A DNA stretch of 50,999 nt. Origin: Octopus sinensis. Its lineage: Eukaryota. Positions within the stretch are counted from its first letter, which is position 1. The number at the start of each line of letters is the position of its first letter. Positions 8,148 through 19,236 of the stretch are shown one piece after another. The position numbers were made by a program, and so were the translations under genes. The notes under the pieces are model-generated. The model searched no databases. It was not told the origin of the DNA and saw only the letters and a program-made list of their open reading frames with translations. The DNA lies in assembly GCF_006345805.1 (NCBI RefSeq), contig NW_021834972.1, positions 1 through 50,999 of the forward strand, given 5' to 3'.

Positions 8148-9125
8148 TTAAAGTCTGATAGAATCATACACAGGGTTAGTGGCTCCCCATGAATCTCTTT
8201 GTGAGTCATCTAGAAGCGGTGCATAAGCTATTTCATTGTTTTGTGGCAAAGGACTCTGCTGCGGCGATTCTTCATCTGTCGCTTGATCAGTATCTTCTTG
8301 GCCAAGTTGACTGCCATCGTTGTCAGCAACAACCCACGTCATTTCTTCATCATTTGGTTTATCTGAAGAATCGGAATGGTTATCGTCGTCATCGTTGTTG
8401 CCATCATTGTCAATATGGTCGACGTATGAAAGACCATCCGTCTGGTTATCGTCTTGGCCATCGCTGTCAGGTTTCAACAAATTGTCGTCATCAGCAAAAC
8501 TGACGCTATTATTCTTGCCTAAATCAGCAAATGTCATGGTTACTGGAACTTCTAAAGATTGTTGAGATGCTACATCTGTGTTTGCATCCGTATCTTCCTG
8601 AGTAGGAACGCTTTCCAAGGGATCAGGAGATGCCACCTCTGTGTTGTCAGGGATTCCCTCCATATCTTCCAGAGTAGGAACACTTTCCAAGTTGTCATAT
8701 ACTATAGTATGGATTGGAGGCTCTTCAGCTGGTAAAGAATCTCCAGCTGCGTTGTCGGGAATTCTTGGCTTAAGACTAGTATACAGGTTTTCATTTTCTA
8801 TTTTTTCAACAACGTCGCTTTTCAGGGGAGGCACCTGCGACTCACTGTCGTAGTCTTCTTTTGGAAGATCACCGCTCTCTAGTAAGCCTGATAAATTTGC
8901 AGCATTGTTTTCAATGCCGTTCATCTTGGAAGAATTCTTCGAAAGATTGTCGTACTCTGCGATGGCTGACGGCTTCGTCGCTAAGTTCGCCTCACTATCA
9001 CCGTCGTCGTTATCTCTTTGCTTTCGCCACCAACAATAACCCAAAATTATTACTACTATCAAAATTATTATTATGAACAGCAACACTCCGACGGCACCGA
9101 AAAACTCGCCATTTGAATAGGGATT
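8148..9125 (-). CDS. Terminal exon 2: transmembrane helix plus ~290-aa acidic cytoplasmic tail (325 aa)
   Basis: The 312-aa ORF extends in frame up to acceptor ttttttttctatatttttcag|AAT (phase 0). Starts NPYSNGEFFGAVGVLLFIIIILIVVIILGYCWWRKQR. Tail has IVYDNL and IAYAPL and ends NPVYDSIRL-stop. Confidence 0.85.
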   Translation of the reverse strand, partial: NPYSNGEFFGAVGVLLFIIIILIVVIILGYCWWRKQRDNDDGDSEANLATKPSAIAEYDNLSKNSSKMNGIENNAANLSGLLESGDLPKEDYDSESQVPPLKSDVVEKIENENLYTSLKPRIPDNAAGDSLPAEEPPIHTIVYDNLESVPTLEDMEGIPDNTEVASPDPLESVPTQEDTDANTDVASQQSLEVPVTMTFADLGKNNSVSFADDDNLLKPDSDGQDDNQTDGLSYVDHIDNDGNNDDDDNHSDSSDKPNDEEMTWVVADNDGSQLGQEDTDQATDEESPQQSPLPQNNEIAYAPLLDDSQRDSWGATNPVYDSIRL

Positions 9126-9196
9126 CTGAAAAATATAGAAAAAAATTAATTAATAATTAGCAGTGGAGTAGCAACAGCAATATAGTGGTGAAAATA

Positions 9197-17700: not shown

Positions 17701-19236
17701 CAAATTATCCGGACATAAAGTTGGTCTATATTTTTTCAACTTCCTCTTCACTTCATTAATGAGGATATCATTGCTGTTATTATTACCCATGCTGTTTTTG
17801 TGTCTGTTGTTGTTGTTATTGTCATCACCGTCAACATTATCGATTTCTTTGGTGGTTCTCGTTGCTGGTTGACACGGAATGCCATATGAGGTCTGTACAG
17901 TTGGCGGCATTTTTGGCGGCCATGTATCTTCGTAAGACGACGACAATGTTGTTGAAGAATGATCTACGTCGACGGCTAAAGGTAGCAGCGCTTCATCAGA
18001 GTTTCTGTTACTACTATATCGTGTCCGATCGAGCGACATTGAAATTCGTTTCGACAAAATTTCTTCTTTCTTCGCAAGAAGAGAACTTTTATTATAGACA
18101 TTGAGAGATTGATTCAGGCGGTCGTTTCGTTTCTGAAAAGACGGGGAACTTACTCGTTCAATATTTGGTTCCATAATCCATGTTCTTGGGGGAACAGAAG
18201 GTGGCCTCTCTTTAATACCAGAACAGTCATCTAATGTCACTCTGCACTTGGTTGGTAATCGGGACACAGTACTTGCATTCTCTTGCTCTGTCTTTGGTGA
18301 CTCAGCTCTCTCGATGCCGGGGAGTTTCCTAATTGTGTTTCCGGGAGAATATCTTTTTAATCTATGGTTCAACTTTGAAGCAGAACTCTGTCTAACTGTC
18401 TCAGGTGAACGTTTAAATGACCTTCCTTCGCTTCTCTTCAAAGATCTTCTATCACCGAACATACCTTCGTTATTTCTGTCATTTCTATTATTGCTGTTGT
18501 AGCCATATTTACTTTTTCTGTTGATTTCCTTATTAAATCTTGCTTTTCTTCTGCGTAGTTTCTCTGATTCCAATGGGGTTTTGACGGCCATTGACGGTAG
18601 ACATAAAGTTTCGGTCTCGTTATTGGAAGTTCGATCTGATGTGAGTTGCTGACGTAGTTCTTGCAACTCTGATTTTCCATACCGGTTTCTTGTGGGCGGA
18701 CGTTCGATTTCAACTATTACTTCGTTACTTTGAATAAAACTGTTGTTCTTAGCAGGCCTTTCGTCTGATTTCTGCAATGGGGGTCTTTTGGGAACTTCCA
18801 AATGTACAGGGGTCAATGAACGAGTGAGTCGAGGTGGAGCACCAAAAGTGTCGCTTTCCTTTATATTCAAGGCTGGTCTTTTTGATTCGTTTTTAGAGGT
18901 GACCGATTTAATCACAAGTGAACCGTTATGGTCCTTACCTAAAGAAACTGACAGCTTCCCAGCTCCGTGTCGGCGCAACGGCGCCAAAGACGCAGCTTGC
19001 TGGTTTTTGTTCTTAGCATTGTCTGAAAAGATGTCTGTCGAATTGTTTTTAGCTACATTCGATAGGCCATTGAAAGAGTTTTGGAAAGGGAAGATGGGCA
19101 TTAGTTTTCTAGCACGTATACACAGCACCAATAAACAAATAACAACTACAAGAAGAACAAGACCCATAATGGTTAAAATACAGAAGAAAATAACTACCGA
19201 TACTGCGCCACCAAGTGTCGTCGTCGTTGGAACGAA
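14785..19236 (-). CDS. Terminal exon 1: transmembrane helix plus ~1440-aa low-complexity, largely disordered cytoplasmic tail (1483 aa)
   Basis: The 1460-aa ORF extends in frame up to a strong acceptor tttatttcttttctctaatttcag|TTC (phase 0). Starts FVPTTTTLGGAVSVVIFFCILTIMGLVLLVVVICLLVLCIRARK. Has 4.4 kb without a stop, including non-repetitive AT-rich stretches. Contains poly-Pro/Thr/Ala/Asp/His/Gln tracts, YINM, YLEP and YVNV; TGA at 14785-14787. Confidence 0.85.
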   Translation of the reverse strand, partial: FVPTTTTLGGAVSVVIFFCILTIMGLVLLVVVICLLVLCIRARKLMPIFPFQNSFNGLSNVAKNNSTDIFSDNAKNKNQQAASLAPLRRHGAGKLSVSLGKDHNGSLVIKSVTSKNESKRPALNIKESDTFGAPPRLTRSLTPVHLEVPKRPPLQKSDERPAKNNSFIQSNEVIVEIERPPTRNRYGKSELQELRQQLTSDRTSNNETETLCLPSMAVKTPLESEKLRRRKARFNKEINRKSKYGYNSNNRNDRNNEGMFGDRRSLKRSEGRSFKRSPETVRQSSASKLNHRLKRYSPGNTIRKLPGIERAESPKTEQENASTVSRLPTKCRVTLDDCSGIKERPPSVPPRTWIMEPNIERVSSPSFQKRNDRLNQSLNVYNKSSLLAKKEEILSKRISMSLDRTRYSSNRNSDEALLPLAVDVDHSSTTLSSSYEDTWPPKMPPTVQTSYGIPCQPATRTTKEIDNVDGDDNNNNNRHKNSMGNNNSNDILINEVKRKLKKYRPTLCPDNLSHHTDPHYINMSRSPNARTPRVKSLAESTNTPKTSCVNVPESDNLYASKSYSSRCDDGYLEPFLRSSCLEADLIARAKLELILKYAEQQRQLKKLQKQQRSETLENLSSTLDIEDVLGMTSNFTDISTERNKMDKRISPNYFEWQKSLGLTGEDSSLAFYPTPSFDTRHLKKFRATKDHPESLRETTISSSQNSTTVAASTTLTANAATAAAAAAAAAAATTTTTTTTTTTTTTTTTTTTTTTTLPEEATVSTPSAFSSLPRTEQRQLRLRSSPLPPTPPPPPPPPPSKSSSSPSSSSIPMSTSSPSSSISSSSSSSNIFYYHSGHVTSYGQFMVDAPLYQRTNIEEYLPVTFHHLELSVTPTAPTRSERPRPSLRPQPPPPPPPPPPPPPPTPLPSPAPPLASTLSPALSPSQLLLLPVCALSQTPLLPMSSGSSPALTVLSSIPTSPPSTVTTAAMTATTTTTTVTIMTIATESTTTKARTLAAPQKILSAPQKIISAPQKILSAESTIQCRNHKKLQRHPPDREPSGSDGSRGLISSDHRRKEQEQVPQTSLSRPEDRGELCQSELHLSETNGMEKMPIPKQPSKVRSRKHKINEDGDGTVSILNDTKEIIDGSCKKKSFLESSVELLKYEDCSSFNHGTDTNRSIAEEFTMENSSTLPRPVNTDRETIDSLDLLDSIFADDNDSLTFSSSESVCAPLFFDESHGKQKEFDNLFIQGTSAFYRSDEDDAIYEKDDDDDDDDDDDDDKNDDHEDCIVGGGDNDDDGNIEKKDEKDDNDADDDGDVVDDDDDADADGDNGGDCGGEDLQGDRSKEVTHRCSHHHDRNRHHRPHNHHHHHHSYNQHQHNFPPHQHHKQQQQQQQQQQHYQQHHEEQQTSIDDNFLLSSRLSEDSRRPKSTSYYVNVGHMPFTFLPVLNDLNYGYQVQQTDAVVRSFTNSYAQNRRSDSTNEIQGDEKAAKKNVSLKVSSVY

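What the first reader, a model, noticed from the sequence alone, without database searches (positions are those of the whole stretch)
8148..19236. Two alternative last exons, each with its own TM helix and cytoplasmic tail: a paired-receptor-like switch within one gene
Seen: both large ORFs start at strong phase-0 acceptors (19236 and 9125), matching the phase-0 donors of the stalk exons. Each encodes juxtamembrane + TM + Cys/basic stop-transfer + tail + stop. No signal-peptide exon or other convincing exon was found between them. The TM starts resemble each other (GGAVSVVIFF vs FGAVGVLLFI), hinting at an ancient exon duplication. Inference: one ectodomain can be joined to either a 1483-aa or a 325-aa membrane/tail module, chosen by splicing versus polyadenylation at ~14730.
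Basis: partly seen in the sequence, partly recalled or inferred. Interest (0 to 1): 0.88.

Follow-up and report, generated by a model that had tools for sequence, protein, structure and literature searches.

The report
Octopus cadherin-mucin gene, two tail options
An octopus cell-surface gene (cadherin-like head, mucin-like stalk) carries two different, evolutionarily maintained membrane-anchor-plus-tail coding blocks at its 3' end; in a sister species the gene models all use the short one, reached by splicing out of the first 39 bases of the long one, so the long tail is probably an unannotated read-through alternative rather than a separate skipped exon.

Summary
On the minus strand, 19236-14785 (1483 codons) and 9125-8148 (325 codons) are open reading frames behind good phase-0 acceptors. 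Each has one hydrophobic segment, a Cys/basic stop-transfer and a long tail.

The window is syntenic with Octopus bimaculoides LOC106871506. Its 12 RefSeq-predicted isoforms run: cadherin-like ectodomain, a variable set of Ser/Thr stalk exons, a 14-codon mini-exon, then the small TM/tail exon.

The mini-exon is the first 42 nt (39 nt in the window, 19236-19198) of the large ORF. It ends at a conserved weak internal donor, TCG|GTAGTT. So the two are not simple mutually exclusive last exons. The large ORF is a read-through extension of a shared exon, a composite terminal exon.

The large ORF is coding:
- it is intact in both species;
- dN/dS is 0.41;
- 19 of 19 indels are in-frame, against 9 of 34 in the adjacent non-coding DNA;
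- about 13 stops are expected under neutrality and none is seen;
- a conserved AATAAA lies 53 nt after the stop.

No transcript evidence for the long-tail isoform could be obtained, so its junction with the ectodomain is inferred. The proposed "ancient duplication" of the TM and the "paired receptor" analogy are not supported. Verdict: a real, modestly novel case of a known mechanism.

The parts
44721..44813 (-). Stalk exon 1 (PTGLTPSSSADSSSVTPGQNQSSSDSMTSTS), 93 nt, phase 0/0
   Evidence: Regex and translation with ttgtag|...|gtacat borders. Orthologous to L003 54321-54413, an exon of RefSeq XP_014773481.2.
42726..42818 (-). Stalk exon 2, 93 nt, phase 0/0
   Evidence: Syntenic with L003 56346-56426.
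38698..38799 (-). Stalk exon 3, 102 nt, phase 0/0
   Evidence: Member of the PTGPS...VTLGENQTT exon family also used in O. bimaculoides isoforms.
37886..37987 (-). Stalk exon 4, 102 nt, phase 0/0
34963..35079 (-). Stalk exon 5, 117 nt, phase 0/0
33057..33149 (-). Stalk exon 6, 93 nt, phase 0/0
30844..30933 (-). Stalk exon 7, 90 nt, phase 0/0
29267..29353 (-).
   Evidence: Orthologue of L003 70168-70257.
24251..24322 (-).
   Evidence: Aligned to O. bimaculoides exon L003 75077-75151 (LSVPYTPEVTRGESEKTGKNTTDSS), which is included or skipped in RefSeq isoforms. In the alignment the flanking intron looks much better conserved than the exon.
19198..19236 (-). Shared mini-exon (FVPTTTTLGGAVS), 39 nt. 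It is the first 13 codons of the large ORF; its acceptor is at 19237/19236.
   Evidence: Sequence. The orthologue L003 81460-81501 (LIPSSTTPLGVPAS) is an internal exon in every one of the 9 RefSeq or earlier-RefSeq isoform sequences read out in full (P0002, P0004, P0005, P0007, P0008, P0011, P0013, P0019); the rest are inferred from their lengths of 585-732 aa.
19192..19197 (-). Internal 5' splice site GTAGTT (TCG|GTAGTT). It is weak and identical in O. bimaculoides. When used, it joins to 9125; when ignored, reading continues into the large TM/tail.
   Evidence: L003 81502 'gtagttat'.
14785..19197 (-). Read-through extension of the exon: TM (VVIFFCILTIMGLVLLVVVICLLVLCI), RARK, and a cytoplasmic tail of about 1440 aa (coiled-coil-like stretch, polyThr/Ala, two polyPro runs, acidic and His/Gln-rich runs, conserved YINM and YVNV), then stop TGA at 14787-14785
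   Evidence: ORF. Intact orthologous ORF. aa identity 1130/1322, dN/dS 0.41, Fisher p=2e-13. 19/19 indels are in-frame. 0/2000 neutral simulations stay free of stops. Motifs.
14726..14731 (-). AATAAA 53 nt after the large-ORF stop (second copy at 14635-14630). Both lie at identical offsets in O. bimaculoides.
13900..14784 (-). Putative 3' UTR of the long-tail mRNA: 91-95% identical to O. bimaculoides, against roughly 78-90% for most intron HSPs
14801..14802 (-). GT of a late donor-like site (AAG|GTCAGC), 5 codons before the large-ORF stop. The UniProt model A0A0L8HCL0 uses it to join the large ORF to the small exon.
   Evidence: The P0003 junction ...KKNVSLK|EAYTTGEFF.
8148..9125 (-). Small terminal exon CDS: NPYSNGE, TM (FFGAVGVLLFIIIILIVVIILGYCWW), RKQRD, and an acidic tail of about 290 aa with conserved islands (ENENLYT, PVTMTFADLGK, VSFADD, TDGLSYV, EEMTWVVADNDG, QNNEIAYAPLLDDSQRDSWG), then stop TAA at 8150-8148
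   Evidence: Homologues P0001 (E=2.7e-76), P0002 and P0003. Three-species alignment. dN/dS 0.54. The acceptor is conserved in L001 and L003.
7800..8147 (-). Conserved 3' UTR of the small terminal exon. The first AATAAA is only at 7366-7361.
   Evidence: Alignment with L001 stays well conserved for at least 330 nt past the stop. HSP with L003. Poly(A) signal scan.

Best explanation
The window holds the 3' two-thirds of one minus-strand gene. It is the orthologue of Octopus bimaculoides LOC106871506, which encodes a type I surface protein. That protein has cadherin-like domains (encoded upstream of the window) and a mucin-like Ser/Thr/Pro stalk built from symmetrical cassette exons. It ends in a membrane anchor plus a cytoplasmic tail.

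After the last stalk exon, the acceptor at 19236 is used in every case. Thirteen codons later lies a weak 5' splice site (TCG|GTAGTT, 19198|19197).

- If this site is spliced to the acceptor at 9125, the protein receives the 26-residue TM and a conserved acidic tail of about 290 aa.
- If it is not spliced, translation runs on in frame through a different TM and a tail of about 1440 aa, to the stop at 14785. The mRNA would then end at the conserved AATAAA sites 53 or 149 nt further on. This is a composite terminal exon produced by intronic polyadenylation.

The outcome is one ectodomain with two unrelated TM-plus-tail modules. The choice would be set by competition between a weak splice donor and an intronic poly(A) site.

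Shown: the exon and ORF anatomy; the junctions of the small-tail form, as predicted RefSeq models in the sister species; and purifying selection on both tails. Inferred: that the large ORF is translated as a continuation of the ectodomain mRNA; that the AATAAA is used; and any regulation or function.
For: Synteny and models:
- The window is syntenic with the O. bimaculoides locus L003 along its whole length.
- The exon map of XP_014773481.2 on L003 gives stalk exons, then 81460-81501 (mini-exon, donor gtagtt), then 90867-91799 (small exon).
- Every isoform sequence read out ends this way, and the isoforms differ only in their stalk exons.
- The window has the same acceptor, the same donor hexamer and the same phase.

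Coding status of the large ORF:
- It is open in both species.
- dN=0.068, dS=0.165, dN/dS=0.41. The Fisher test of synonymous against non-synonymous changes gives p=1.9e-13.
- 19/19 indels are multiples of 3, against 9/34 in the neighbouring non-coding DNA.
- Neutral simulation predicts about 13 stops; 0/2000 runs stayed stop-free.

Topology and 3' end:
- The hydrophobic stretch begins at the internal donor and runs on in frame. Read-through therefore gives exactly one TM.
- AATAAA lies at +53 and +149 after the stop, at identical offsets in both species. The next ~900 nt are 91-95% identical.

Small exon: it is conserved in a third cephalopod, including its acceptor and 3' UTR.
Against: - No transcript, EST or peptide evidence could be reached for the read-through form.
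- RefSeq lists 12 isoforms for the orthologue and none has the large tail. A 195-N assembly gap inside that ORF may have blocked such a model.
- The only public model containing the large ORF (A0A0L8HCL0) joins it to the small exon instead of ending it.
- The RefSeq XP_ models are predictions, and their RNA support could not be inspected here.
- AATAAA is common in AT-rich DNA.
- dN/dS of 0.4-0.5 indicates only moderate constraint.
- The ectodomain exons of the window's own species lie outside the window.
Confidence: 0.6

Rival explanations
1. Nested or independent gene. The large ORF is translated from its own transcript, started by a promoter in the intron upstream of 19236. Translation might begin at the ATG at 19167 (MGLVLLVVVICLLVLCIRARK...). 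The product would be a signal-anchored membrane protein unconnected to the cadherin/mucin ectodomain. The host gene makes only small-tail proteins.
For: All 12 RefSeq isoforms use only the small tail. An in-frame ATG lies 10 codons after the internal donor, followed by a hydrophobic run and RARK. Selection on the ORF is equally compatible with this reading.
Against: - No gene is called there in the O. bimaculoides annotation.
- The hydrophobic run after the ATG is only about 16 residues, whereas the in-frame run from the donor is about 30.
- The ORF is open and in frame from the used acceptor onward in both species.
- No promoter evidence was found.
Confidence: 0.15
2. The large ORF is an internal exon. 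It is spliced from the late donor AAG|GTCAGC (14803|14802), five codons before its stop, to 9125. This gives a protein with two TM segments and both tails, as in UniProt A0A0L8HCL0.
For: P0003 (A0A0L8HCL0, 1681 aa) has exactly this junction...KKNVSLK|EAYTTGEFF. The donor-like site is present in the window and is phase 0.
Against: - The N-terminus of that model is clearly artificial. It starts inside a stalk exon and reads unconserved sequence (one search compared).
- The model jumps the assembly gap with a frame change (one search compared).
- A second TM would put the small tail outside the cell. In all RefSeq isoforms the same tail follows a single TM and is cytoplasmic.
- The stop, VSSVY* and the AATAAA just downstream are conserved.
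Confidence: 0.1
3. The two are whole, mutually exclusive last exons, and the stalk donors join directly either to 19236 (kept whole) or to 9125 (large exon skipped entirely).
For: Both acceptors and all stalk donors are phase 0, so a direct stalk->9125 junction would be in frame.
Against: Every O. bimaculoides isoform sequence read out carries the 14-residue mini-exon between the stalk and the small exon. The internal donor is conserved in the window.
Confidence: 0.08
4. The large ORF is a relic of an ancestral terminal exon that is no longer expressed. It looks conserved only because the two species are close.
For: Introns of the two species are also 80-90% identical. No annotated isoform uses the large ORF.
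Against: No stops where about 13 are expected. 19/19 indels are in-frame, against 9/34 nearby. dN is significantly below dS.
Confidence: 0.04

Closest known systems
Octopus bimaculoides LOC106871506 (RefSeq XP_014773481.2 and isoforms X1-X12, named 'uncharacterized protein' or 'serine-rich adhesin for platelets'; UniProt A0A0L8HCL0 and A0A0L8HD78)
   Same: Orthologous locus. The order of stalk exons, mini-exon, large ORF and small exon is the same. The splice sites are the same. Large tail about 85% and small tail about 62-68% aa identity.
   Different: It is a different species: dS is 0.17-0.32, there are eight rather than seven PTG-type stalk exons, and there are SINE insertions. RefSeq annotates only small-tail forms. 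UniProt fuses both tails in one model. Neither source presents the two tails as alternatives.
Composite-terminal-exon intronic polyadenylation (class defined in PMC8559711 and PMC5928244; textbook case, from my own knowledge: immunoglobulin mu heavy chain, secreted versus membrane form)
   Same: An exon contains an internal 5' splice site. Splicing from it reaches downstream terminal exon(s). Ignoring it extends the exon to an intronic poly(A) site and gives a different C-terminus.
   Different: Here both outcomes would be membrane-anchored, each with its own TM and long tail, instead of secreted versus anchored or truncated. Use of the intronic poly(A) site is inferred, not shown.
CDHR5 / mucin-like protocadherin (PMC10916864)
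   Same: Cadherin repeats, followed by a membrane-proximal Thr/Ser/Pro-rich tandem-repeat domain of about 31-aa units, one TM and a cytoplasmic tail. Splice isoforms differ in inclusion of the mucin-like repeats.
   Different: No detectable sequence relationship of the tails. According to that paper, the CDHR5 isoforms share one TM and tail. Orthology was not tested.
Drosophila Dscam1 alternative TM exons 17.1/17.2 and NCAM GPI-versus-TM terminal exons (my own knowledge, not checked here)
   Same: One ectodomain is attached to alternative membrane-anchoring modules by alternative RNA processing.
   Different: Dscam1 uses mutually exclusive internal cassette exons. NCAM uses a skipped terminal exon that gives a GPI anchor. 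Neither swaps TM plus a whole tail by exon read-through.

Membership tests
Composite terminal exon / intronic polyadenylation isoform pair | An internal 5' splice site inside an exon, used in one isoform | tested here: met
   TCG|GTAGTT at 19198|19197. The identical site is used in the O. bimaculoides RefSeq isoforms.
Composite terminal exon / intronic polyadenylation isoform pair | The reading frame continues past the donor to a stop inside the 'intron', and that extension is functional coding sequence | tested here: met
   A 1470-codon in-frame extension, with dN/dS 0.41, 19/19 in-frame indels and no stops where about 13 are expected.
Composite terminal exon / intronic polyadenylation isoform pair | A poly(A) site in the intron downstream of the extension is actually used | not testable with these tools
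   Only conserved AATAAA hexamers at +53 and +149 and a conserved downstream stretch are seen. No 3'-end or RNA data were reachable.
Composite terminal exon / intronic polyadenylation isoform pair | Read-through transcripts start at the same promoter and contain the upstream exons | not testable with these tools
   No transcript data. An exact-product look-up of the large ORF found nothing.
Cadherin superfamily (cadherin-related, mucin-like) | Extracellular cadherin repeat(s) detectable by profile | tested here: inconclusive
   Pfam PF00028 hits the O. bimaculoides orthologue (E=5.5e-11, above the gathering score). Those exons lie upstream of the window (one search finds none in it), so the window's own gene is assigned by synteny only.
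Paired (activating/inhibitory) immune-type receptors | One partner has a short tail and a charged TM residue that recruits an ITAM adaptor | tested here: not met
   Neither TM contains K/R/D/E. The tails are about 290 and about 1440 aa, and neither carries an ITAM.
Paired (activating/inhibitory) immune-type receptors | The other partner carries ITIM(s) | tested here: inconclusive
   One ITIM-consensus hexamer, I(A/G)YAPL, is conserved in three species in the small tail. A short motif like this can arise by chance, and nothing functional is known about it.
   BLASTP finds no alignment at E<=100 for the first 60 aa, and the best E is 2.2 over the full lengths.

The most novel reading that the evidence does not exclude
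A single octopus cadherin-related, mucin-stalked receptor switches between two unrelated transmembrane-plus-cytoplasmic modules. One is an acidic tail of about 290 aa with a conserved ITIM-like IxYxxL and an NPxY. The other is a tail of about 1440 aa with polyproline runs and conserved YINM and YVNV motifs. The switch would be kinetic competition between a weak internal 5' splice site and an intronic poly(A) site. The same extracellular recognition event could then be wired to two different intracellular outputs in different tissues or states. The long form is missing from current annotations.
Probability: 0.4. Interest if true: 0.65.

Novelty: new member of a known kind. Interest (0 to 1): 0.45.

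Why it matters
If the read-through form is real, current octopus annotations miss a conserved 1,470-residue C-terminal module of a cell-surface adhesion or receptor gene. One public model wrongly fuses both tails.

It would also be a clear invertebrate example of intronic polyadenylation exchanging the whole membrane anchor and signalling tail of a receptor, instead of truncating it. This is relevant to how cephalopods diversify surface-protein function beyond gene-family expansion and RNA editing.

The practical value is a concrete re-annotation and a set of junctions to test in existing RNA-seq or Iso-Seq data.

Tried and rejected
- Word-index protein search with the first 640 aa of the large ORF: no hit. 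A chimeric query (orthologue ectodomain plus large tail) hit only through the ectodomain part. The index evidently does not return the UniProt model, so absence there says little.
- Pfam on both tails: only sub-threshold noise such as TFIIA and TMEM154. PDB sequence searches with both tails found nothing.
- BLASTP between the two modules: nothing. The duplication idea was rejected.
- Exact-product look-ups for P0004, P0011 and the window's 1460-aa ORF found nothing. P0019 succeeded.
- P0016 (O. sinensis 'fat-like cadherin-related', 61% identical to the orthologue ectodomain) was tested as the possible upstream part of the window's gene. Its locus L004 is followed 2.3 kb later by a glutamate-receptor gene and shares only SINEs with the window. 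It is therefore a paralogue or another locus.
- Literature searches for the gene and protein identifiers and for the SRA run of L001 returned nothing.
- I considered a signal-peptide or first exon for the small exon in 9126-14784. The region is SINE, microsatellite or conserved 3'-UTR-like sequence, and the orthologue has no exon there. I did not run an exhaustive ab initio exon scan.

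
Full report
**What is in the window**

The window is AT-rich DNA full of microsatellites and SINEs, of cephalopod type. On the minus strand there are eight short exons, all built the same way: ttgtag|CC(A/C)AC(A/G)GG...|gtacat. They are 87-117 nt long, all multiples of three and phase 0/0, and they encode Ser/Thr/Pro-rich peptides such as PTGLTPSSSANSSSLTPGQNQNTTDSLTSTS.

- The first begins behind ...tctaatttcag| at 19236 and runs 1483 codons to TGA at 14787-14785.
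- The second begins behind ...tatatttttcag| at 9125 and runs 325 codons to TAA at 8150-8148.
- Each has exactly one strongly hydrophobic region near its start, followed by Cys and basic residues (LCIRARK; GYCWWRKQRD) and then a long hydrophilic tail.

**Is it more than chance, and what is it related to?**

A search with the small ORF found one homologue, P0001 (E=2.7e-76), on short Logan genomic contigs. In those contigs the acceptor, the phase, the coding sequence and more than 300 nt of 3' UTR are conserved. Similarity drops off upstream of the acceptor. This is what a genuine terminal exon looks like.

A full HMMER scan with a profile of the small tail found two more proteins.
- P0002 is RefSeq XP_014773486.1 of Octopus bimaculoides.
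- P0003 is UniProt A0A0L8HCL0 of the same species.

Further retrieval showed that the O. bimaculoides gene LOC106871506 has 12 predicted RefSeq isoforms of 585-732 aa. Every isoform sequence I read out has the same order: a cadherin-like ectodomain (Pfam PF00028, E=5.5e-11), a variable subset of stalk exons, the peptide LIPSSTTPLGVPAS, and then the small TM/tail. The isoforms differ only in which stalk exons are included.

**The orthologous locus**

The genomic locus of isoform X1 (L003, CM046624.1) could be fetched. It is collinear with the window from about L003 45.8 kb to 99 kb, with introns alignable at roughly 78-92%.

Mapping X1 onto L003 gave the exon table. The peptide LIPSSTTPLGVPAS is a 42-nt exon at 81460-81501. 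Its acceptor is the orthologue of window 19236, and its donor is TCG|gtagtt. The next and last exon is 90867-91799, the orthologue of window 9125-8151.

The window has the same arrangement: ttcag|TTCGTTCCAACGACGACGACACTTGGTGGCGCAGTATCG|GTAGTTATTTTC. This is a 39-nt mini-exon (19236-19198, FVPTTTTLGGAVS) with the identical donor hexamer.

The small-tail mRNA therefore does not skip the large exon. It enters the large exon, leaves after 13-14 codons, and joins the small exon in phase 0.

By eye, its flanking introns are far better conserved than the exon itself.

**Is the rest of the large ORF real coding sequence?**

No RefSeq isoform contains it, so this had to be tested. The orthologous ORF in O. 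bimaculoides is open from the same acceptor to the same ...KKNVSLKVSSVY* end. It is interrupted only by a 195-N assembly gap.
- Amino-acid identity is 1130/1322.
- Nei-Gojobori estimates are dN=0.068, dS=0.165 and dN/dS=0.41. The excess of synonymous change is significant, with Fisher p=1.9e-13.
- All 19 indels in the ORF are multiples of three, against 9 of 34 in the non-coding DNA between the two ORFs.
- Random substitution at the observed divergence produces on average 13 stop codons. None of 2000 simulations stayed open.

The large ORF is therefore under purifying selection as a protein. The small exon gives dN/dS=0.54 with dS=0.32.

Immediately after the large-ORF stop, the two species are 95% identical for about 190 nt and 91-95% identical for about 900 nt. 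AATAAA hexamers sit at +53 and +149 in both. This is consistent with a 3' UTR and poly(A) region.

**How it most likely works**

The hydrophobic stretch of the large ORF begins exactly at the internal donor (...GGAVS|VVIFFCILTIMGLVLLVVVICLLVLCIRARK). Read-through therefore yields a single TM followed by a cytoplasmic tail of about 1440 aa. Splicing yields ...GGAVS|NPYSNGEFFGAVGVLLFIIIILIVVIILGYCWWRKQRD... plus a tail of about 290 aa.

This is the anatomy of a composite terminal exon as opposed to a skipped terminal exon, the two classes of intronic polyadenylation events (PMC8559711; PMC5928244). A weak internal 5' splice site would compete with a downstream intronic poly(A) site. From my own knowledge, the classic example is the immunoglobulin mu secreted/membrane switch.

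I rate this model at 0.6. The small-tail junctions are shown, though only as predicted models in a sister species. The coding status of both tails is shown. The physical continuity of ectodomain exons with the large tail, the use of the AATAAA, and any regulation are inferred.

**Rivals**

- (a) The large ORF could be an independent nested transcription unit starting at the ATG at 19167. The hydrophobic run after that ATG is short (about 16 residues), and no gene is called there, but I cannot exclude it. Confidence 0.15.
- (b) The UniProt model A0A0L8HCL0 splices the large ORF from AAG|GTCAGC (window 14803|14802) to the small exon, giving two TMs. Its N-terminus is plainly artificial, and it would place the small tail on the wrong side of the membrane. 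Confidence 0.1.
Confidence 0.08.
- (d) The relic reading is contradicted by the selection tests. Confidence 0.04.

**Claims that fail**

The two modules share no detectable similarity.

The paired-receptor analogy also fails on its defining features. Neither TM has a charged residue, neither tail has an ITAM, and both tails are long.

As leads only:
- The small tail has a hexamer I(A/G)YAPL, conserved in three species, that fits the ITIM consensus. It also has an NPxY in two species.
- The large tail has conserved YINM and YVNV motifs and polyproline runs.

Neither tail matches any Pfam family or PDB chain.

**Comparison with known systems**

The gene itself is known only as a predicted locus, and I found no paper mentioning it. 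In architecture it resembles CDHR5, the mucin-like protocadherin. That protein has cadherin repeats, a membrane-proximal tandem-repeat domain of about 31-aa TSP-rich units that is alternatively spliced, one TM and a tail (PMC10916864). No homology of the tails is detectable, and orthology was not tested.

The RNA-processing logic belongs to a well-known class. The unusual aspect is that both products would be membrane-anchored through different TM helices with unrelated long tails.

**Verdict**

In novelty it is a new member of a known kind. Interest is moderate (0.45). The case is a good re-annotation target and directly testable with existing octopus RNA data, but it is not a new principle, and its key isoform is still unproven.

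Noticed in passing
In the alignment with O. bimaculoides the flanking introns look much better conserved than the exon itself, a pattern typical of regulated alternative exons. The orthologous exon is included or skipped among the RefSeq isoforms.
   Followed up: partly
window 29267-44813 (-) versus L003 54321-70257: The copy number of PTG-type stalk exons differs between species (8 in the window, 7 in O. bimaculoides). The middle copies are most similar to each other, which suggests lineage-specific tandem duplication of exon-plus-intron units.
   Followed up: partly
window 9195-9293; L001 1-24; L003 about 90.6-90.8 kb: A long (TAC)n/(ACT)n trinucleotide microsatellite sits about 70-170 nt upstream of the small-exon acceptor in all three species. 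The same repeat type encodes the polyThr run inside the large ORF (16969-17076). A role in splicing is possible but untested.
   Followed up: no
window 9408-9871, 27135-27539, 33944-34356, 39546-40036, 50297-50723; also 9994-10328 and 40578-40963: Multiple copies of a SINE of about 400 nt, plus a second repeat. Their copies in an O. sinensis locus (L004) are up to 98% identical. The insertions at 9.4-10.3 kb are absent from O. bimaculoides. This suggests the window comes from the O. sinensis/vulgaris lineage.
   Followed up: partly
window 1005-2034 (+): ORFs with reverse-transcriptase-like sequence (e.g. GVPHGTVLPRLLF), probably a decayed LINE. The stretch is syntenic and 86% identical in O. 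bimaculoides (L003 97466-98939).
   Followed up: no
L003 83825-84019: A 195-N assembly gap lies inside the large ORF of O. bimaculoides, in the polyPro/polySer region. It may explain why RefSeq has no long-tail isoform and why the UniProt model changes frame there.
   Followed up: partly
L001 60-165: In the third species, the 66 nt that contain the small-exon acceptor and its first codons are tandemly duplicated. This creates two candidate acceptors.
   Followed up: no
L003 56426/56427: In the exon map, the O. bimaculoides RefSeq model ends its second stalk exon at ...TTG|gcaagtac. This is an apparent GC-AG intron, 12 nt upstream of the usual gtacat donor position.
   Followed up: no
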